A DNA stretch of 64,000 bases, taken from Oopsacas minuta (lineage: Eukaryota; Animalia; Porifera). The notes below the pieces were generated by a model. That model ran no database searches. It saw only the letters and a program-made list of their open reading frames with translations, and was not told the DNA's origin. The translations under genes were made by a program, and so were the position numbers. Positions 18,549 to 31,602 of the stretch are shown here, piece after piece. The stretch is taken from NCBI GenBank assembly GCA_024704765.1, contig JAKMXF010000302.1, positions 62,001 through 126,000 of the forward strand, in the 5' to 3' direction. The first letter of the stretch is position 1; every line of letters begins with the position of its first letter.

Positions 18549-18770
18549 TAAAACACAAATTTACTTCGATTGTGTATATTTTGATTTGAAAAGAGACTGT
18601 TTGTTTTAAATTTGAAATTTAAAGTGTTTGCCACATGGTTTATTAATAATGTAGAAATTATCCAAGAGGTCAGATGGCTTATAGAGCAATACTGTAAGAT
18701 ACATTACGTTGCAATATTATGTTCTTTTCTTATGTATCTAATTTATACAATACATCCACTTAGTCATATC

Positions 18771-21700
18771 ATGTCACAAGAACCTACACCTAAACCTATC
18801 AGCAAGTCTACACGATACGACAGACAGCTGAGATTGTGGGGTGATAAGGGACAAGCTACTCTTGAGTCAGCTCATGTGTGTCTCATAAATGCATCAGCTA
18901 TTGGGTCTGAAACATTGAAAAACCTGGTTCTCCCTGGGGTAGGTAAGATAACTGTCGTAGACTCTAACAAAGTAATGGGGAGGGATCTGGGAAATAACTT
19001 CTTCCTGGATCAAGACTCTCTAGGATTGTCTCGAGCAGATCGTGTGAAAGAGCTGTTGTTAGAAATTAATGAAGAAGTTACTGGCGAATCTGTTGCCACA
19101 GACATAAATACCCTGATCAATGAGAATCCTGAATTCTTCAAACAGTTTAGTGTTGTCATAGCAACACAGGTATCCGAGGGAATTTCTCTCCCCCTCTCTC
19201 GCCTCCTGTGGAGTCAGAGAGTACCATTGATTCTTGTGAAATCATACGGGTTTATAGGCAGCATACGTGTAGCTACTCCCGAGCACTGTATAGTGGAAGC
19301 AAAGCCTGATAATGCATTGGAAGATTTGAGGTTTGATAAACCTTTCATTGAGCTAGAAACACACGTAAACTCCGTCGAGTTAGATAAACTGGATAAAACC
19401 GAGCATGAACATGTACCATATCTAGTGCTCATTTATAAATACCTGCAGAAATGGAGTGAGCAGAATGGAGGGAGATATCCTTCTAAATACAAAGAGAAGA
19501 AAGAAGTGAAGGAGCTTATTCGACAAGGAATTAGGATTAATCCAGAGACAGGTGGGCCTGAAGCTGAGGAGAATTTTGAAGAGGCTATGAACAATTTGAA
19601 CACAGCTCTAACTGAGACCAAAGTTCCTAGCAACATAGATACTATTCTAAAGGACGATAATTGTGAACAACTAACAGCCCAATCTACTCCTTTCTGGATA
19701 TTGACTGCTGCATTGAAAAAGTGAGTTATAGAAAAATTTATTGAATTATTATGAAGTAATAATAAATAATAATTAGAGTAAATAGTCTAACAAGTCACTA
19801 TTCTACTCAAAGCACCATTTCCCTACCACAATAAATAACAACAAAACAACAAAACAACAAAACAACAAACCTAAGCGATAGAGATCAGTTTTCATCTTCT
19901 TCACAAGGGCTTCTAGTTGATTCATTTCCAATCTTGTTACAGACATCAATGTATCATTCTGCCTATCTTTGCAGATCCCTACATCTACCCAATATGAGAT
20001 CTCATCTAATTCCCTGTGAATATTCACACAAAGTGTTTCATTCACTTTAGGGAAGTTCTGTATCTCTTTTTGTCTGATAGCGGTTTTCAACTTGTTTATG
20101 GATTCGATTATTCTTTCGTATTCTACCGTTTTATTATTCAATCTCACGTTCAGCTGTCCTATATCTACTTTTGTTGCGTATTCAGCCTTTTGCAATTCTC
20201 CCATTTTCTCTTCTACCTCTGCTTTGAAAGACTGTAATTTATCGTATCTTATTTCCAATACATTGTCAAGTTCTGCTTTATTCGTCTCTTCTAACTTTCG
20301 TATTTTATCTCCCAACTTCTGTACTGCTTTTCTCATTACAAATTCGTGTTTTTCTTTTCCCTCTCGAATATGGATAATCATTTCACACCTCTTCAGTTCC
20401 TTGATTTCACATCCTAACTTCCCATACAAACACTTTACAATTGTTTCAGAGCACTCACTATTGAGATGGATAAGCATGTCCTCTCTTGCTACTTCATTGT
20501 CACAACCTTGTGTACATTTGATAGGATAGCGTAGACACTTTGCGAAATGTTTTTGCTCTTCATGAGATCTGTATTCGTTATCACAGAATTTACAGATCTC
20601 ATTTTTGTTTCTGCACCCTTGGTTATGGGAATCTCTTTCCTTTCTTAGGAATTGTTGCTTACAACCTAATTCGCATATCATTATTATATGAGGACACTCT
20701 CGCAAATGGGTAATAATCCTCTCTAATTCTCCTACCCAGTCACACCCCCTCTCCATATAAGGACATCGTACCTCTAGCATACCCACCATCTTTCTGGCGT
20801 CATGAGGAATGTGTCCCTTCTTTTTCCCTGCCTGTACCCCTGAACAAGGAGAACATGCTAGTTTGTCCTCAGATTTATGATTCTCCTTAACTGCATTTCT
20901 AAGAATGTTATCGCATTTATAACAGAGAAATAATTCTCTTACCATGGGATGGAGTTCTTTGAGCAAAATCTCTGTTTTATACCCTCCAAAATTTCCTGGT
21001 GTTATTTCTACGCACAATGCCTGTATCAGAGTTTCAGGAGTATCATTATTTTGTAGTTTTTCTGCCATATTGCTTTCCAATATCAGAGCATTGATAATTC
21101 CTTGCTATACCATATTTATGTGTAGCATGTCAGAATCCTTACAATATAGTTGTCATCTTGTGATAAGAGCTTACAGGTTACAAATATTAGCCGCAACACA
21201 ATGGTTCAATCAAAACATTACGTAATAGAGATGATGGATCATTATTTATTCTTTGTAGGTTCGTCTTAGCAGAAGGGAAAGGAGATCTTCCTCTCCGCGG
21301 TACTATCCCTGACATGACTAGCAGTTCTAAGCAGTATATTGATCTACAGAATTTGTACAGAGAAAAGGCCCGAAAAGATGCACTAATTGTACACAAATAT
21401 GTCAGTGATATCTGTAGCTCTCTTAGTCTATCAGCCGATTATATCAAAGAGGAAGATACCCTTCTATTCTGTAAGAATTCTTCCTTCCTGAACCTCATCC
21501 GTACTACACCGTTAGAAGCAGAGCTATCAACTTTACACTTCAATAGGGATTACTTCGACATGTCTCTTGGTGATGAAGACTCTGATCTAGCCTGGTACGT
21601 ACTGCTACGAGCAGTGGAGAGATTCAACACCAAGTACTCTCACTACCCCATCCCCACGGATATCCCTCTACTGACAGTATGTGTAGAAGAGCTGTTGATT

Positions 21701-21910
21701 GAATGGGGGCTAGTAGGGAAGAAGATCAAAGAGGGGTCTATTCTTGAAATTTGTCGATACAATGGCTGTGAGATTCATACAGTGTCTGCATTCTTAGGAG
21801 GTTTAGCTGCCCAGGAATGCATTAAACTAATCACAAATCAATATATACCTATCAACAACACTATGTTATACAATGCCATAACGTCTACTACGCTTAGCTT
21901 CGAGGCTTAG
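18771..21910 (+). CDS. NAE1: NEDD8-activating enzyme E1 regulatory subunit, 2 exons, 533 aa
   Basis: RYDRQLRLWG and LKNLVLPGVG motifs. Exons 18771-19720 and 21259-21910 join as [29 protein letters not shown]. Intron 19721-21258 (GTGAGT...TGTAG). Confidence 0.95.
19803..21068 (-). CDS. TRAF-type zinc-finger protein (degenerate RING, tandem Zn fingers, coiled coil, C-terminal TM helix), nested antisense in the NAE1 intron
   Basis: CYKCDNIL...CSPC, CPYMERGCDWVG...HLRECP, CELGC...H..C and CTQGC...H...C. No MATH domain; hydrophobic C-terminus. First ATG at 21068 (track start is TTG). Confidence 0.85.
   Translation of the reverse strand: MAEKLQNNDTPETLIQALCVEITPGNFGGYKTEILLKELHPMVRELFLCYKCDNILRNAVKENHKSEDKLACSPCSGVQAGKKKGHIPHDARKMVGMLEVRCPYMERGCDWVGELERIITHLRECPHIIMICELGCKQQFLRKERDSHNQGCRNKNEICKFCDNEYRSHEEQKHFAKCLRYPIKCTQGCDNEVAREDMLIHLNSECSETIVKCLYGKLGCEIKELKRCEMIIHIREGKEKHEFVMRKAVQKLGDKIRKLEETNKAELDNVLEIRYDKLQSFKAEVEEKMGELQKAEYATKVDIGQLNVRLNNKTVEYERIIESINKLKTAIRQKEIQNFPKVNETLCVNIHRELDEISYWVDVGICKDRQNDTLMSVTRLEMNQLEALVKKMKTDLYRLGLLFCCFVVLLLFIVVGKWCFE
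19838..19869 (+). repeat. (ACAACAAA)x4 perfect tandem repeat
   Basis: Four exact 8-mers, read directly from the sequence. The minus strand encodes LLFCCFVVLL. Confidence 0.95.
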
Positions 21911-22869: not shown

Positions 22870-23221
22870 TGTTTCATTTTCTATCACCCGATTATCTTAG
22901 ATTAATTAGCTATAATTTGCTTACCTCACGTAATATACTAATCAAATTAATATATGCTTGTGACCTGTAACGGATCATATACAAACATGCAATAATTAGA
23001 AAATTGCTGAACGATATGAAAGAGTATATCATGTTGAAATTCAATATCATTGCTTCGTTTACATCATTGGGGCCGCCTCCTCTAGCAACTATACTCTTCA
23101 ATAATTTACTTAGGTCAAACATGCATCCTGTATATTAGATCATGTATAACACATAACATACTCATAGTATTAGCTACACACTTTCTCACTGATCAAATAA
23201 GATAACTCGTGACGGCTAAGC

Positions 23222-26200
23222 ATGCCTATGATAACGAAAGGCGACCACGTCTGGCACAAGACGGCCCCCGAATCTGATGAGTTCGGAGTAGCAATCGGTG
23301 CCAAAGTGGAGACAATAGAGAATAAGCAGTACAAACTATATACAGATGATGACGAAGTGAAATGGATAGACGTAAAGGACAAGAATCTCAAGTTAATGCA
23401 TGCATCTAGTATTGAAACTGTAGAAGACATGATACAGCTGGGAGACTTACATGAAGCTGGTATATTACGTAATCTCTTCCAGCGATACAAAAATCACAAA
23501 ATGTATACTTATACCGGAAGTATCTTAGTGGCAGTTAATCCCTATCAGCTGTTGCCTATTTATGATCAGATGCATATAAAAATGTATCAAGTAAGTGTCT
23601 AATAGAGTTTATATTAAACAGAATATTTATTGTGATATTCTATAGGATAAGAAAATAGGAGAAGCACCCCCTCATATTTTTGCGATTGCAGATAACGCAT
23701 ACTACTTTATGCGTAGAGAATTTCGCGATCAGTGCATCATAATCAGTGGAGAGAGTGGAGCTGGCAAGACAGAATCTACCAAGTTGATTCTACAGTTCCT
23801 GGCTGCTCAGTCTGGTCAGCACTCCTGGATAGAACAGCAGATATTGGACAGGTAATATGACGTCATATTTATAGCAGAATTATAGCTAATTATACTATTC
23901 ATTAGTAATCCTGTGATGGAAGCATTTGGTAATGCTAGGACACTACGTAATGACAACAGCAGTAGATTCGGTAAATACATAGACATACACTTTACTCCAG
24001 CTGGAGTTATAGAGGGAGCTAAAATAGAGCAGTATCTATTGGAGAAGTCTCGGTTAGTCCATCAAGCTGCTGGAGAGAGGAACTATCATATATTCTATAG
24101 GCTACTCGCCGGGCTGAATAAGAGAGAGTTAGACCAGTTATATCTATCAGGTATATAGCATATTCACTAATGCTATATTAGAGTATTTATATCTGCTGAT
24201 AGGTAACCCTAAGGAGTACTACTATGTGAATCAGGGGAACTGTTATACCTGTGAGGGTATGGATGAGAAGGAAGAGTTTGCTCTAATCAAAGGGGGCATG
24301 CAGGTGTTGAATTTTGATAATGATCATGTATGGAATGTGTTCAAGATTATAGCTGCTGTACTGAATCTCGGAAATGTAAGCTTCCTAGAATCTGAGAGAG
24401 GTAATATGCCAGTCAGTACGATTAAAAACAAAGACGCGCTAAGAAACGCAGCTGCTCTTCTGGAGGTAAGTTATCAGCTGTTTAACTCTATGTACAAGTA
24501 TTAACTGTGCTTTAGGTACCAGAGCAAGGACTGATAAAGGGACTGACAGAGAAATCTACTCTAGCAAAAGGAGAAGTAATTACCACTCCTCTGTCTGGTT
24601 CCCAAGCTTGTGACTACAGAGATGCATTTGCTAAGGGAGTGTATGGACGTAACTTCGTAGCATTAGTAGATCATATAAACAAGGCTATATACCGTCCACC
24701 TGATGAAAAGAGGAGGTCTAGTACCAGACAATCCATTGGAGTATTGGATATATTCGGATTTGAAACATTCGGTAAAAACAGCTTTGAGCAAATCTGTATA
24801 AACTACGCTAATGAAAATCTCCAGCAGTTCTTTGTTCAACACATATTCAAGCTAGAACAAGCAGAGTACACACGAGAGGGGATAAACTGGGAAGATATTG
24901 TATTCACAGATAATCAGGAAATATTGAATCTCCTCTCTGAGAAACCTCTCAACATGATTGCTCTTATAGACGAAGAGAGCAGATTTCCTAGAGGTACTGA
25001 TGAGACTCTACTGACTAAATTCAGCCAGCAACATAGCAAACATCCTCACTACATACATCCTAAGAGTAGTATAGGAAAACAGTTTGGAATACGTCACTTC
25101 GCTGGTGATGTATTTTATGATGTCACAGGGTTCTTAGAGAAGAATAGAGACACGTTCAGTCCTGATCTACGTACTCTAGTGTTACAGAACTCTACCTCTA
25201 GATTCCTCACATCTCTATTCTTAAAAGATAAAGTAGGGGGCAGTACTGAGACCAGAAAGAAGACTCCTACATTAGGTCTACAGTTCAAGTACTCTTTGGA
25301 AGAACTCATGCGAGCTCTTGGCAGGTGTCACCCCTTCTTCGTGCGTTGTATCAAACCTAATGAATTTAAGAATGCTATGGATTTCGACAGATCTCTTTGT
25401 GTACGACAACTCCGTTACTCTGGAATGATGGAGACTATCCGTATCAGACAGGCAGGCTACCCGATCAGACATGACTTCAGGGAGTTTGTGAAGCGATATG
25501 CTATGCTAATCCCTGGTTTCCATATATCCGCAGATTATAAGCTCAATTCTAAGAGGTTAATGGATAAGTTAATGCCTAAAGCAGATTGGCAGGTAATTAG
25601 TTACTGTTATTTTATTATATTATTAGAGTTATAATTCCTTCATTAGATTGGTAAGAATAAATTGTTCTTGAAAGATCCAGATGATCAGAGGATCGAAGAG
25701 ATGAGAGAGAGCATGATCAGCACATACGTCATCGTGTTGCAGAAGGCAGTGAGAGGTTGGCTAAAGAGACATTACTTCAAACGGCTCAAGAGAGCAGCTA
25801 TTAACTGTCAGAAGAATGTACGTGCTAAGCAGCAGAGGAAGAGATATCTGATAATGAAACGCGGTTTTTCACGCCTTGTCGTGTTAGTAAGAGCTAAATG
25901 GATCCGACACAGATATCTCATTGGTAGGAGAAGAATGGTCCTGTTACAAGCTAGATGCAGGGGATTCTTGGTGAGGAAATTCGCGAGAGAACAGCTGAGA
26001 CTTGTTAACCACCTGCAGATGAGGGTACGTAAGCTGTTGAGCACTAAGGGGGAATCTAAACAGAGACAACATGAAATAGAACATATTATGAATCCGGAGA
26101 AGCTGAGAGAGATAGAAGCTGAGGAGCTGAAACAGCTGATGGAGTTTGGATCAGAGGAAGACGCAGCTATGGCCAAGTATGTTAATATAATAATACTATG

Positions 26201-29200
26201 TAAACCATGGATTATACGATAAAACTTTAGGCAGTATAAAGAGAGATTGCTGGAATTAGAGATGGAGTCAATAGAGGATCAGGAACGGATGTTTATGGAT
26301 GCAGAAAGAAAGAGAGAGTTACTGCTCAGCGGGGTGGATAAAGACAAAGTTAAGATAGATGATTCTGAAACAATGAAAGAGCTGTTTGGCCTCTCTGACG
26401 ATGAGTTACACCCCTATCTAGCTCAAAGTCAAGCAGGCACTGGAGATCTTCCTTACGAAGCTACTGCATTCATGCCTGATATGTTAAATGATGTAGATGA
26501 GGATCTGTCTGAATACAAGTTTGCTAAATTCGCTACAACCTACTTCCAAGTAATAATAAGTTATCTATTATTCTTATATTATTTTATTCATTATATAATT
26601 CTAGGGACAAGTTACATTCTCTCACACTAGACGACCTCTAAAGCAGTCTCTACTTAATATGAAGAATCCTCAGGACAGGCACAGAGCTATAGCTGTGTTC
26701 ATTATGATACTAAGGTTCATGGGAGATCTACCTGAACCTGCTCAACATGAAGGAGGAGATAAGAAGGGATCTGTAGTTAAGAAAATTTATGATACTTTTG
26801 GGAGGAAAATAAAACCACCAAAGTTTGTATATTTTAGATAATATAAGTTTGCAATTAGTGCTTATCTTATATTGTTATAGGATAGAGGACTATGAAGGAG
26901 AGGAGGTAACACTACCCCCTGTCCCTGCCTCTGAGAAGAAGAAGGATTCTCTCAGGAAGCGACTAGTCAGCATGACTCTAAAAAGAAAGACTAAACTACC
27001 ACCCGATCTCTTATCCACTAATGCTAATACTATGAGTGAGGAGGAAGTAGCTATATCAGTACTGACTAGAGGTACAAGTAATCTAGAGAAGTTACACTTT
27101 ATCATAGGACACGGTATATTACGTCCTGAAATGAGAGATGAAATATATTGTCAGATCTGTAAACAGCTGACTCAAAATCCTAACAAGACTTCTCATGCTA
27201 GAGGATGGATCCTCTTGTCCCTGTGTGTGGGTTGTTTCACACCTTCTGAGAAGTTCATCAAGTACCTTAAGGAGTTCATAAAGGACGGACCACCAGGCTA
27301 CGCCCCCTATTGCAGAGAGAGGCTGAATAGGACAATACTTAACGGATCCAGAAGTCAGCCTCCCTCCTGGCTAGAATTACAGGTTTGATATACTGAATAT
27401 ATCCTTTATATACTTATTCTATTGAGTTTGTTATAGGCCACTAAGAGCAAGAAGCCCCTTATGCTTCCTATCACATTCATGGACGGTACTACAAAGACTT
27501 TACTAGCAGACTCTGCTACTACTGCTAGAGAGCTGTGTACACAGCTGGGAGAGAAGATCGGATTGAAGGACCAATTTGGGTTCTCTTTATATATCGCGCT
27601 ATTTGATAAGGTATCATCACTGGGGTCTGGAGGGGATCACGTGATGGACGCTATCTCACAGTGTGAGCAGTACGCTAAGGAACAGGGTGCACAAGAGAGG
27701 AACGCCCCATGGAGACTATTCTTCAGGAAAGAGATATTCTCTCCATGGCATCAGCCATCAGATGATCTAACAGCTACTAATCTCATATACCAACAGATAA
27801 TCAGAGGGATAAAGTTTGGAGAGTATAGATGTGAGAAGAATGAAGATTTGGCTGCTTTAGCTTCTCAGCAGTACTACATAGATCATGGAGTATCTGTAAG
27901 TATATGCTACATATCCATAGTCCATACTATATTGAATATTATATGGTATTATAGATGGGAAGTGAGAAGTTAACGCAAGCTGTTAGTTTATATATTCCTG
28001 ATACTTGTCTCACTGGACATGGTACTGTAGAGAAATGGGTATCAGCTCTGCAAGCATATCATGCTAAGGCGTATTACGCCAAAGAGGGTTCCGATAAGAA
28101 CCGCGTGAAAGAGGATGTTGTATTATTCGCAAAATTCAAATGGCCTCTCCTATTTTCGCGCTTCTTTGAAGCTTACAGATTTGCTGGTCCCGTCCTCCCT
28201 AGAAATGACGTCATAATAGCTGTGAATTGGACTGGTGTATATATTGTAGATGACCAAGAGCACGTACTGCTGGAGTGCTCCTTCCCAGAAATAACTAATG
28301 TAGCTGCTAACAAGACTCCTGGGAATCAGACACATAACAGCTTCTCTCTGGGTACTATTAAGAGTGATGAGTATACATTCACTTCTGCTAGTGCTGATGA
28401 TATATGTGAGTTAGTCAAGTACTTCTTGGATGGACTTAGGAAACGGTGAGTTGTTAAATCCTTATAAATACTATTTTATTGTTGTCGTTATTAATCAGAT
28501 CGAAGTATGTAATCGCCATGATGGATTACGATGCTCCTGGAGAAGGTTCCTCCTTCCTAAGCTTCAGGAAAGGAGACCTGATTCATTTGGGAGATAACGA
28601 GCAGGGGGAAGATGTTATGAACTCTGGCTGGTGTTTCGGACAGAGTGAGAAAACAGGCGCTAAGGGAGACTTCCCTGCAGAGTGTGTATACATACTTCCT
28701 ACTATTACTAAGCCCAGTCACGAGGTAATCACCCTGTTTGCTACACGTAGCTCAGATGAGACAGACAGAATACTTGCGACTACTAACAGTGCTCTAGACT
28801 ACGCTAAGAATGAAGCAGCTGACGACCTATCATCTCCCCCGTACACTTTAGAATCCTATGCTATAGATCACTTCCTCCCGCTCCCTAAGAGGACTCTATC
28901 TAAGGCTCTAGCTAAAGGTATTATTTCCTCACTCTATTTATACTTGTGTACTTATATGATTCATGTTAGGTCAGGGCTGGATTACCGCACGTGCGGAATG
29001 TGCGATCGCACAGGGCCCAAACTACGTGAATATTTACCTAATCGCAGACCCGGGCCGGGTTTAGGTAATCTTTTAGATGTTTTAGTTTACTTTCATTGTC
29101 CACTTTAATTATTAGCTAATTGCTCATAATGGAATTGTGTTTCTTTGTATTCTTCAATTCATAAGAACAATTCCTTATATTTAAGGTTGGATATTAATTT

Positions 29201-31602
29201 GTCAACAATGAACTCTATGAATTAAACTAAGGTGAAATTGTGAAAACATATTATAGTTGTTTATTAATAACTAATCATCATTTCCTACTATATATGAGAC
29301 TATTACAAATTATTTGTATATTTTGATACTTTCCTTAATAAGTTGTCTTTGCTATATTTTGATTCGATGTCTTCCTACAAACACAAAGTGGGGCGCAGAA
29401 ACGAGATGCTGCTGCTTCCACAGTGCGTTATATATCAAAGCTTTTTTTGTCCGTTTGTCTGTCTGTTTGTTTGATTGTCCGTTGTCAAGGAAAGGCCCGA
29501 ACGGAAGGTAACGCACAAGGCCCGCAATATGCTTAATCCGCCTGTGTTAGGTGCTCTGAAGCGTAAAGAAGGACAGCCGTGGAGCTTCCAGAGAGATCCT
29601 ATAAAGGCACCTCTCCTCAAGAAACTAGAACACTCCTCTGAAGAGGTAAAGCAGAAATCTCTAAGTGCCTTCTTAGCTATGCTAAAGTACACAGGAGATT
29701 ATCCTAGCAAGAGACTAAGACTCAGTACAGAGCTTACTGATCAGATATTCGAACCTCCCATTCAGTATGAGTCTCTACGTGATGAAATATATTGTCAGAT
29801 TATTAAACAGCTGACTCACAATAAGACTAGAGTCAGTATAGAGAAAGGATGGGAGTTACTATGGCTAGCTACTGGATGCTTCGGCTGCGGGTATTAATTA
29901 TATTATAATAATGGGTTGAAATAGTTATACTAGAATTATTATATATTCGTTAGTCATGCTCTTGGGAAAGATGTAAACCTATTCCTACAAACTCATGTGA
30001 AGCGGAACAACTTCGCAGCTGATTGTGTGAAGAGACTTCAGAAGACCATGCGTAACGGACCAAGAAAGTACCCCCCTCATATAGTAGAGCTAGACGCTAT
30101 ACAGAATAAGACTACTCAGATATTTCATAAGGTCTTCTTCCCTGACGAGAGCACACATGCTTTTGAAGTTGACTCCGGTACAAAAGCTAGAGATTTCTGT
30201 CAGATAATCTCTGATAAATTGAACTTAAAATCAGCTGAGGGGTTCAGTTTATTCGTTAAGATAACTGAGAAGGTTATCAGTGTCCCTGAGGGTGATTTCT
30301 TCTTTGACTTTGTCAGACATCTGAGTGAATGGCTTAGGAAGGCACGTCCTGGTAAAGAGACCATGGGAGCTAGTGTCAGTTACCAGGTAGACTTTTTTCT
30401 TAAATCAGCTGATTATTACGTGTTACTTATCAGCTGTTTATCTGCAGGTATTCTTTATGAAGAAGTTATGGACTAATGTGAATATCGGTAAAGACATAAA
30501 GGCAGATTCTATATTCTACTACCATCAAGAGCTACCTAAGCTATTGAGAGGATATCACAAGTGTTCTCTTGATGAGAGTATTCAGCTAGCTTCTCTTATA
30601 TACAGAGTTAAGTACGGAGATGATACCAAATGGTTCTCACAGTTCCCTAAGATATTAGACCAGTTCGTGCCTGTTGATCTCCTCCCCTCCATCACTCCCG
30701 ACGAGTGGAAGAGAGAGATAAGCTCTCTTCACCACAAAACACCTAGAAACAGAGATGACGCTAAAGTTATGTTTCTTAAAATAATATCTAAATGGCCTAC
30801 GTTTGGCTCTGCCTTCTTCGAAGTGAAACAGACTACAGAACCTAAACTCCCTGAGTATGTTCTCATAGCAATAAACAAGTATGGAGTAAACCTTATAGAT
30901 CCTAACTCAAAGGATATCTTAGCGACATATCCCTTCACTAAGATAAGCAATTGGAGTAGTGGTAATACATATTTCCATATGACTATTGGTAATCTGGTGA
31001 GAGGCTCTAAGCTGTTATGCGAGACTAAACTAGGTTACAAGATGGATGATCTACTAACCTCCTACATATCACTGATGCTGTCTAGCATTAATAAGCCTCA
31101 ATCTAAGGGCGGTGACTATTCACCTCCTGGTACGAAACGGACTATGCCATCCTCTCGATCAGGAGGCTCTACCTCTACTAGAACTACCAATATATCAGAT
31201 TCAACTCGTTCTGGAGGATCCATGCCCTCTAAACATCAGCCTGTTTATCACCCTCCTCCCATGAACATGCCTCCACCAGGGATGCCAATAGCTCCAATGC
31301 AAATGGGTATGCCTCCACAAATGGGTATGCCTCCTCAGATGGCTATGGTTCCCCCACAGATGCACATGTCCCCTACTGGCCCTTATGGGTATCCAGGAAA
31401 TTTGCCCAGACAGCAACGACCTATACCCGTTGGAATGCCTCAGATGGCTAAACACCGTCCCCAACACATGCCAATGGGGGCACACCCACAAACCAGGAGA
31501 CCCGTACAGCCGAGCAGTTCCGGATATGGTACTGGGTCCAGTAGCCAATCCCGGAGTATCCCCTCCTCCACACCTTCCAGAGGAGGACATAGTCGCATGT
31601 AA
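23222..31602 (+). CDS. MYO7A: Myosin VIIa (motor, IQ, MyTH4-FERM-SH3-MyTH4-FERM), multi-exon
   Basis: GESGAGKT P-loop, [25 protein letters not shown], two MyTH4-FERM modules with an intervening SH3, and [13 protein letters not shown]. The fragmented ORFs are joined by short GT-AG introns. Confidence 0.95.
28972..29544. mobile_element. Non-autonomous hAT-type DNA transposon (MITE), 573 bp, with 8-bp TSD TGTTAGGT
   Basis: Imperfect TIRs: left CAGGGCTGGATTA; right (reverse complement) CAGGCGGATTA, with subterminal TGCGG..TGTGCG at both ends. Exact 8-bp direct repeat TGTTAGGT at 28964-28971 and 29545-29552. No transposase ORF. Confidence 0.88.

What the first reader, a model, noticed from the sequence alone, without database searches (positions are those of the whole stretch)
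28918..29552. hAT MITE whose target-site duplication copies the myosin VII splice acceptor (possible TE-made recursive splice site)
Seen: the 8-bp TSD TGTTAGGT is exactly the intron/exon junction (TTAG|GT). Removing the element restores a 52-nt intron (28918-28969), typical for this genome. With the element, splicing to the second copy (AG at 29549-50) gives the correct frame: [16 protein letters not shown]. Using the first AG alone reads into the TE and stops at TAG after ~30 codons. The first AG is directly followed by GTCAGG, a plausible 5' splice site, and the right TIR supplies a branch-like CTTAAT ~15 nt before the second AG. Inference: the insertion is tolerated either by skipping the first acceptor or by zero-length-exon recursive splicing. 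This is a snapshot of the TSD-mediated intron-gain mechanism proposed for AG|GT-duplicating transposons, inside a conserved gene.
Basis: partly seen in the sequence, partly recalled or inferred. Interest (0 to 1): 0.78.

Follow-up and report, generated by a model that had tools for sequence, protein, structure and literature searches.

The report
Transposon sitting on a myosin intron's end
In this glass-sponge genome a small cut-and-paste transposon recently landed exactly on the end of a very old, tiny intron of the myosin VII gene and copied that intron's end signal, so the gene can still be read correctly only if the cell uses the second copy; this is a clean but ordinary kind of event, and whether the cell does so could not be tested.

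Summary
The 8-bp repeat TGTTAGGT (28964-71 and 29545-52) brackets a 573-bp non-coding element with hAT-like ends. Run contigs of two related organisms (about 98% and 91% identical) skip exactly 581 bp and keep one repeat copy. Two more distant relatives (about 82% and 78%) keep the short intron and lack the element. It is therefore a recent insertion with a true 8-bp target-site duplication, and it is not an assembly error.

The intron is ancient: same place and phase in all relatives. This is a 52-nt intron enlarged to 633 nt, not an intron gain.

The hAT assignment is plausible. "MITE" overstates it, because only a few other copies are seen.

No RNA data could be reached. Direct use of the second acceptor, two-step (recursive) removal, and mis-splicing all remain open. 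Splice-site scores depend on the training set and do not decide. In one set the GTCAGG donor scores like a random GT; in the other it falls at the weak end of real donors.

The scan holds unchecked first-reader notes of other hAT MITEs in coding regions of this genome.

Verdict: new member of a known kind, modest interest.

The parts
23213..31599 (+). Myosin VII gene (coding part seen in the window), at least 15 exons separated by very short introns
   Evidence: Open stretches. Pfam on exons by reference: Myosin_VII_N, Myosin_head, MyTH4, RA_2, FERM_C1_MyoVII, SH3, MyTH4, RA_2, FERM_M, IRS. Named relatives are myosin-VIIa.
28499..28917 (+). Exon upstream of the insertion (SH3 domain and linker); it ends with the first base of a Gly codon
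   Evidence: 91-93% identical ORFs in relatives.
28918..28969 (+). The ancestral 52-nt phase-1 intron: donor AAG|GTATTA, upstream acceptor AG at 28968-69
   Evidence: An orthologous intron of 49 nt in L001 and 54 nt in L002 lies at the same codon. It is retained in the empty-site contigs of X5, X7 and X9.
28964..28971 (.). Target-site duplication, copy 1 (TGTTAG|GT)
   Evidence: D10, where 8 letters fit both sides of the X5 joint.
28970..28975 (+). GTCAGG directly after the first AG: candidate donor for two-step (recursive) removal
   Evidence: PWM score -0.1 bits (12 introns) or 4.5 bits (35 introns). Use is untested.
28972..29544 (.). Inserted 573-bp non-coding, non-autonomous DNA transposon, hAT-like. 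GC-rich ends (0.5-0.6) and an AT-rich middle (0.2-0.28)
   Evidence: ORFs lying wholly inside the element are no longer than 65 aa and the 65-aa ORF has no protein relatives. No Rfam match.
28972..28984 (+). Left terminal inverted repeat CAGGGCTGGATTA
   Evidence: 11 of 13 positions pair with the right end, with two 1-nt indels.
29532..29544 (-). Right terminal inverted repeat (read on the minus strand: CAGGCGGATTA..); it contains TTAAT 14 nt before the second AG
29062..29064 (+). In-frame TAG reached if only the first acceptor is used
   Evidence: ORF 28963-29064 in the same frame.
29446..29495 (.). About 50 nt inside the element that match a very abundant repeat in all three organisms laid
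   Evidence: summed depth 1e4-1e5 against flanks of about 100-260, with consistent foreign flanks in the loose ends. No other copy in the window.
29545..29552 (.). Target-site duplication, copy 2. Its AG (29549-50) is the frame-restoring acceptor
29551..29890 (+). Exon downstream of the insertion (linker and start of the second MyTH4 domain)
   Evidence: The register matches spliced fragments of other animals, P0030 and P0038.

Best explanation
Shown: a short, non-coding, hAT-like cut-and-paste transposon inserted recently onto the acceptor junction of an ancient 52-nt phase-1 intron of myosin VII. It is present in this genome and absent at this site in four related genomes. The staggered cut duplicated 8 bp, TGTTAG|GT, so the element now lies between two copies of the acceptor. 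Inferred: the ancestral mRNA can be made only if the downstream copy ends up as the acceptor, which turns the 52-nt intron into a 633-nt one. I think this happens in at least part of the transcripts, most simply by direct pairing of the old donor (28918) with the new acceptor (29550). The upstream acceptor keeps its whole original context at the preferred 52-nt distance. Strong decoy acceptors also lie inside the element. I therefore expect competition and a leaky allele rather than a fully normal one. It is an intron enlargement, not an intron gain.
For: Structure: exact 8-bp repeat and element ends. Exact 581-bp skips with one repeat copy occur in X5 (97-98% identical) and in X7 and X9 (about 91%). 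The short intron without the element is at the same Gly codon in L001 and L002. X1 contigs bridge both junctions at the same mean word depth as the flanks (106 against 114 and 91), and X1 has no empty-site contig. Other copies exist: X5 has contigs over 28990-29398 although its myosin site is empty, and X1 has variant contigs. Frame: joining at the second AG gives the register seen in spliced fragments of other animals (P0030, P0038), and the downstream exons are intact. Acceptor #2 scores within the range of real acceptors: 2.7 bits with 12 introns and 8.0 bits with 35. Long introns are normal for the species according to its genome paper, which gives a mean of 341 bp (PMC10280926).
Against: There is no RNA evidence at all (one search lists no RNA run, and all four runs laid are DNA contigs with introns retained). 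The upstream acceptor is intact and scores 6.4 or 7.6 bits. All 12 other introns of the gene are 50-63 nt, which favours the near acceptor. Decoy acceptors lie at 29076 (7.8-9.2 bits), 29085 and 29256, and donor-like sites at 29065 and 29232. Apparent homozygosity shows viability, not correct splicing. No annotated or transcript-derived protein of this genome across the junction was found.
Confidence: 0.55

Rival explanations
1. Two-step removal through a zero-length exon (recursive splicing), or as two abutting introns. The 52-nt intron is spliced to the first AG, which regenerates AAG|GTCAGG. That site then acts as donor to the second AG, 581 nt on. Alternatively the 581-nt GT..AG unit (28970-29550) is removed first, which recreates the ancestral pre-mRNA. 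The final mRNA is the same as in the direct route.
For: The AG|GT juxtaposition is real. The unit 28970-29550 begins with GT and ends with AG, and its removal restores the empty-site sequence exactly. The near acceptor is intact and at the preferred distance. One real donor in a relative is CAG|GTCAGT (L001), so GTCAG donors can work in this clade. After the first ligation the donor scores 4.5 bits, above 4 of 35 real donors.
Against: With the window's own 12 introns the donor scores -0.1 bits, the median of all GT in the gene. C at +3 occurs in 1 of 38 donors. Nearer decoy acceptors (29076, 29085) would compete for such a donor. From general knowledge, known recursive sites have strong regenerated donors and serve very long introns. 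There are no RNA intermediates to look at.
Confidence: 0.15
2. A mostly mis-spliced allele, hypomorphic or null. The near acceptor or decoys inside the element are used, transcripts carry the TAG at 29062-64 and are degraded, and the individual lives with little or no myosin VII.
For: The upstream acceptor context is intact. There is a strong preference for about 50-60-nt introns in this gene. Decoy sites lie inside the element, and an in-frame stop follows after 30 codons. The insertion looks young: the repeat is perfect, an identical 157-nt contig has twice the flank depth, and the site is empty in a 98% identical genome. Selection may therefore not have acted yet.
Against: The insertion appears homozygous in the sequenced wild individual. 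The downstream acceptor is of normal strength in the larger training set. All downstream exons are open, though that is expected anyway for a young insertion.
Confidence: 0.28
3. Not an insertion here: an assembly artefact, or a precise deletion in the other genomes.
For: The inverted ends are short and imperfect. On sequence alone the repeat plus ends is not beyond shuffled controls.
Against: Run contigs of the source sample bridge both junctions. Four separate genomes at four distances lack the element cleanly, with a single copy of the target. Other copies of the element exist elsewhere.
Confidence: 0.02

Closest known systems
Introners: intron-generating DNA transposons of algae, dinoflagellates and other eukaryotes (Huff et al. 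2016; Gozashti et al. 2022, PMC9860276; 2025, PMC12130899; review PMC11282704)
   Same: A short non-autonomous DNA transposon with terminal inverted repeats and a target-site duplication. One or both splice sites can come from the duplication. Here the unit 28970-29550 gets both its GT and its AG from the two repeat copies.
   Different: Introners land in exons and create new introns, in families of many near-identical copies. Here the element landed on an existing, ancient intron and only lengthened it. Only a few copies are seen, and splicing is untested. [quoted passage not shown]
Recursive (ratchet-point) splicing at AG|GT sites in long Drosophila and vertebrate introns
   Same: An acceptor is directly followed by GT inside what is now a longer intron. 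Ligation to the first AG would regenerate a donor.
   Different: Known sites have strong regenerated donors, are conserved and serve introns of tens of kilobases. Here the donor is weak or ordinary depending on the model, the site is an accident of a duplication, and the intron is 633 nt.
Ac/Ds (hAT) insertion alleles of maize whose element is spliced out of the pre-mRNA
   Same: A hAT-type non-autonomous element in a gene, with leaky function possible because the element is removed by splicing.
   Different: There the splice sites lie mostly within the element ends and removal is usually imprecise. Here a precise restoration is possible because the duplication itself carries the native acceptor.
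MITE-derived introns of the tunicate Fritillaria borealis (Henriet et al. 2019, as summarised in PMC11282704)
   Same: An animal genome with tiny introns in which small inverted-repeat transposons with duplications sit at intron borders.
   Different: Those are numerous, non-canonical (AG-AC or AG-AT) new introns with an adapted spliceosome. Here there is one GT-AG case at an old intron position.

Membership tests
hAT superfamily, non-autonomous element | 8-bp target-site duplication | tested here: met
   Exact 8-bp repeat. Empty sites skip exactly 581 = 573 + 8 bp, and 8 letters fit both sides.
hAT superfamily, non-autonomous element | Short terminal inverted repeats beginning 5'-YARNG (criterion from general knowledge) | tested here: met
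   The ends read CAGGG.. and, on the other strand, CAGGC... 11 of 13 positions pair, with two 1-nt indels. This is weak on its own.
hAT superfamily, non-autonomous element | Loose target consensus nTnnnnAn (criterion from general knowledge) | tested here: not met
   TGTTAGGT has G at positions 2 and 7. This is a weak, statistical criterion for a single copy.
hAT superfamily, non-autonomous element | An autonomous partner with the same ends that encodes a hAT transposase | not testable with these tools
   The rest of the genome could not be searched. There is no other copy in the window.
MITE | Small (<800 bp), non-coding, with inverted ends and a duplication | tested here: met
   573 bp. ORFs lying wholly inside the element are no longer than 65 aa, and the 65-aa ORF has no relatives.
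MITE | High copy number, homogeneous family | tested here: inconclusive
   Summed contig depth over the interior is about 4x the flanks in X1 and about 2.5x in X5, and nil in organism C. The tool warns that depth is not a copy number. Only a few variant contigs are seen.
Introner (intron-generating transposon) | The insertion creates an intron where the ancestral gene had continuous exon | tested here: not met
   The intron is present without the element in X5, X7, X9, L001 and L002, at the same codon and phase.
Introner (intron-generating transposon) | Many near-identical copies that serve as introns in unrelated genes | not testable with these tools
   This needs the whole genome and RNA. 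There are only unchecked first-reader notes of other cases.
Recursive splice site | Acceptor directly followed by a donor (Yn-AG|GT) | tested here: met
   TGTTAG|GTCAGG at 28964-28975.
Recursive splice site | Regenerated donor of working strength | tested here: inconclusive
   -0.1 bits (12 introns) against 4.5 bits (35 introns). GTC donors are 1 of 38.
Recursive splice site | RNA intermediates or lariats from the internal site | not testable with these tools
Myosin VII | Motor, IQ region, then MyTH4-FERM, SH3 and MyTH4-FERM tail | tested here: met
   Pfam on nine exons by reference. Named myosin-VIIa hits at 60-70% identity.

The most novel reading that the evidence does not exclude
The element plus one repeat copy (28970-29550) behaves as a self-contained GT..AG intron abutting the old one. 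In that case an 8-bp duplication spanning AG|GT automatically gives this hAT family its own splice borders. If the family prefers AG|GT targets, it would be an animal (sponge) introner caught at an early, low-copy stage. The unchecked first-reader notes of exonic hAT MITEs with GT/AG-bearing duplications elsewhere in this genome hint at such a preference.
Probability: 0.1. Interest if true: 0.65.

Novelty: new member of a known kind. Interest (0 to 1): 0.3.

Why it matters
This is a tidy natural experiment. The same 8 bases that end a tiny, ancient intron now occur twice, 581 nt apart, and one allele state (present or absent) is documented in closely related genomes. With RNA from carriers it would show how a short-intron animal chooses between an old near acceptor and a duplicated far one. 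It would also show whether a duplication alone can make a transposon harmless in a gene. That would bear on how transposons become introns. As it stands it adds one more transposon-at-a-splice-site case, and it does not show intron gain or recursive splicing.

Tried and rejected
- Other copies in the window: none for either end at up to 3 mismatches and none by blastn against the masked window.
- A window-wide scan for 8-bp repeats with inverted ends ranks this element first. Shuffled windows reach equal or higher scores, so that statistic alone proves nothing.
- A JGI metagenome scan with the left-end 19-mer gave 4 hits. None extends beyond 19-20 nt, so they are chance matches.
- A word search with the element's longest ORF found nothing.
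- Word searches with the upstream exon and the last exon found no protein of this genome. They returned only DNA-derived ORFs of relatives and myosin-VIIa of other animals.
- Rfam found nothing on the element or on the whole window.
- RNA folding of the enlarged intron and of both acceptor regions is no better than shuffles (z = -1.5, -1.3 and +0.7). The two ends do not pair in the predicted fold, so there is no structural argument for either acceptor.
- An automatic intron finder over the whole window drifted into false positives and was dropped. The hand-checked introns of the gene and their orthologues were used instead.
- The branch-site motif yTrAy is present before only 15 of 37 real acceptors, so it does not discriminate.
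- The large exhaustive protein search was not used.
Exons were searched by reference only, so a full-length search for an annotated model was left out.
Full report
**What is there.** The window carries a myosin VII gene on the + strand (about 23213-31599). Nine exons translated by reference give Myosin_VII_N, Myosin_head, MyTH4, RA_2, FERM_C1_MyoVII, SH3, MyTH4, RA_2, FERM_M and IRS. Named relatives of the last exon are myosin-VIIa. According to follow-up notes of this scan the genome is the glass sponge Oopsacas minuta; I did not verify the species name myself.

**The junction.**
- The exon with the SH3 domain ends at 28917, followed by GT at 28918.
- The 8-mer TGTTAGGT stands at 28964-71 and again at 29545-52, and the bases just outside differ.
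- Between the two copies lie 573 bp that begin CAGGGCTGGATTA and end with its imperfect inverse (11 of 13 positions, two 1-nt indels).
- The element has GC-rich ends and an AT-rich middle. ORFs wholly inside it are no longer than 65 aa, the 65-aa ORF has no protein relatives, and there is no Rfam match.
- Splicing 28917 to 29551 reads ..[16 protein letters not shown]...
- Using the first AG alone runs 30 codons into the element and stops at TAG 29062-64.

**Is it more than chance?** On sequence alone it is not. A scan of the window for 8-bp repeats with inverted ends ranks this element first with a score of 8, but shuffled windows reach 9. The comparative evidence settles the question.
- Four public runs were laid on 27400-30500. 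All four are DNA contigs, since introns are retained.
- The source sample (X1) has contigs that bridge both junctions. Their mean word depth matches the flanks (106 against 114 and 91), and there is no empty-site contig.
- Run X5, a differently labelled organism 97-98% identical, has a contig that skips 28963 to 29545. That is exactly 581 bp, and 8 letters fit both sides.
- Runs X7 and X9, a third organism about 91% identical, skip the same 581 bp.
- A word search with the upstream exon led to two ENA assemblies. L001 is about 82% identical and L002 about 78%.
- Both have a 49-nt or 54-nt intron in the same Gly codon, in the same phase, and no element.

The element is therefore an insertion with a true 8-bp target-site duplication. 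It is young, because it is absent in a 98% identical genome. It is neither an assembly artefact nor a deletion in the others.

**What kind of element.** An 8-bp duplication and ends that start CAGGG fit the hAT superfamily; that criterion comes from general knowledge. The loose hAT target consensus is not met, and an autonomous partner could not be looked for.
- Other copies exist. X5 has contigs over 28990-29398 (97-98% identical) although its myosin site is empty, and X1 has variant contigs with 5-14 differences.
- One 157-nt contig in X1 is identical to the window apart from one gap and has twice the flank depth.
- Summed depth over the interior is only about 4x the flanks in X1 and about 2.5x in X5, and nil in the third organism. 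The tool warns that this is not a copy number.
- "Low-copy non-autonomous hAT-like element" is therefore safer than "MITE".
- The stretch 29446-29495 belongs to something else as well, an extremely abundant repeat in all three organisms.

**Not an intron gain.** All 13 intron positions of the gene that I mapped are shared with L001 and L002. The one exception is the intron at 24151-24202, which L001 lacks cleanly. The intron hit by the element is one of these old introns. The event enlarged a 52-nt intron to 633 nt. The other 12 introns of the gene are 50-63 nt. The genome paper gives a mean intron size of 341 bp (PMC10280926), so longer introns are handled by this animal.

**How it may work.** The correct mRNA needs the downstream AG. 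Spliced fragments of other animals (P0030, P0038) show the same register across this linker (..PPKRTLSK.., about a dozen residues, then W-x-aromatic-x-basic-acidic-P..PLLKKL), so the 29551 junction is the ancestral one. Three routes give that mRNA:
- the old donor pairs directly with the far acceptor;
- the transcript is spliced to the near acceptor, and the regenerated AAG|GTCAGG donor is then re-spliced to the far acceptor;
- the 581-nt GT..AG unit is removed first.

I scored the sites with position weight matrices built from this gene's own introns.

| Site | 12 window introns | 35 introns incl. L001 and L002 orthologues |
|---|---|---|
| Near acceptor (28969) | 6.4 bits | 7.6 bits |
| Far acceptor (29550) | 2.7 bits | 8.0 bits |
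| GTCAGG donor after first ligation | -0.1 bits (median of all GT in the gene) | 4.5 bits (above 4 of 35 real donors) |

- C at +3 occurs in 1 of 38 donors, and that one is CAG|GTCAGT in L001.
- Decoy acceptors inside the element score as well as the real ones: 29076 (7.8-9.2 bits), 29085 and 29256.
- A yTrAy branch motif lies 14 nt before the far AG, but only 15 of 37 real introns have one.
- Predicted RNA structure gives no argument either way.

The sequence therefore allows all routes and decides none. The near acceptor keeps its full native context at the preferred distance. For that reason I expect competition and a leaky allele.

**What could not be done.**
- No protein of this genome across the junction was found by the word searches.
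- The exhaustive protein search was spared.
Exons were searched by reference only, so the full-length search was left out.
- A note of this scan says glass-sponge U2 snRNA has an A-tract in place of the branch-site reader. If true, branch-motif arguments are weaker still. I did not test it.

**Comparison and verdict.** The closest known systems are the introners, in which duplications supply splice sites (PMC9860276, PMC12130899, PMC11282704). The defining feature, a new intron in a former exon, was tested here and is not met. Recursive splice sites share the AG|GT juxtaposition, but their use is untested and the donor is weak or borderline. This is a well-documented transposon insertion on a splice junction, differing between closely related genomes: a new member of a known kind, of modest interest. 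Its value lies in being directly testable with RNA from carriers.

Noticed in passing
window 29446-29495: About 50 nt inside the element (a T/G-rich stretch ending ..GTTGTCAAGGAAAGG) match a repeat with summed contig depth of 1e4-1e5 in all three organisms laid. The loose ends show consistent foreign flanks on both sides. It is a separate, very abundant repeat family that shares this module with the element. There is no other copy in the window, and a weak 42-nt match in L002:443-484.
   Followed up: partly
window 24151-24202; L001 about 1702: The 52-nt intron of myosin VII at this place is cleanly absent in relative L001 (exons are contiguous). It is present in the window and is 100 nt long in L002. 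This is an intron presence/absence difference among related glass-sponge genomes.
   Followed up: yes
window 28985-29009 and 29492-29524: The element's left subterminal region holds two perfect palindromes, CCGCACGTGCGG (28985-96) and GCGATCGC (29002-09). The right subterminal region repeats AAGGCCCG twice (29492-99, 29517-24), and the complement CGGGCC occurs near the left end. These are possible transposase-binding repeats.
   Followed up: no
window 30436-31596: Animal myosin-VIIa proteins outside the glass-sponge relatives cover only about 56-58% of the last exon's translation. The two closest relatives cover 98-100%. This suggests a clade-specific C-terminal extension after the second FERM domain.
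   Followed up: no
window 19722-21190: Two long open stretches on the + strand, 18585-19721 and 21191-21907, lie about 1.45 kb apart. If they are exons of a single gene, that would be a long intron among genes whose introns are otherwise about 50-60 nt. I ran no family or homology search on either stretch, so neither a shared gene nor its identity is established, and the content of the gap was not examined.
   Followed up: no
L001 4875-4926: One orthologous myosin VII intron in relative L001 uses a CAG|GTCAGT donor. It is the only donor with C at +3 among the 38 examined.
   Followed up: yes
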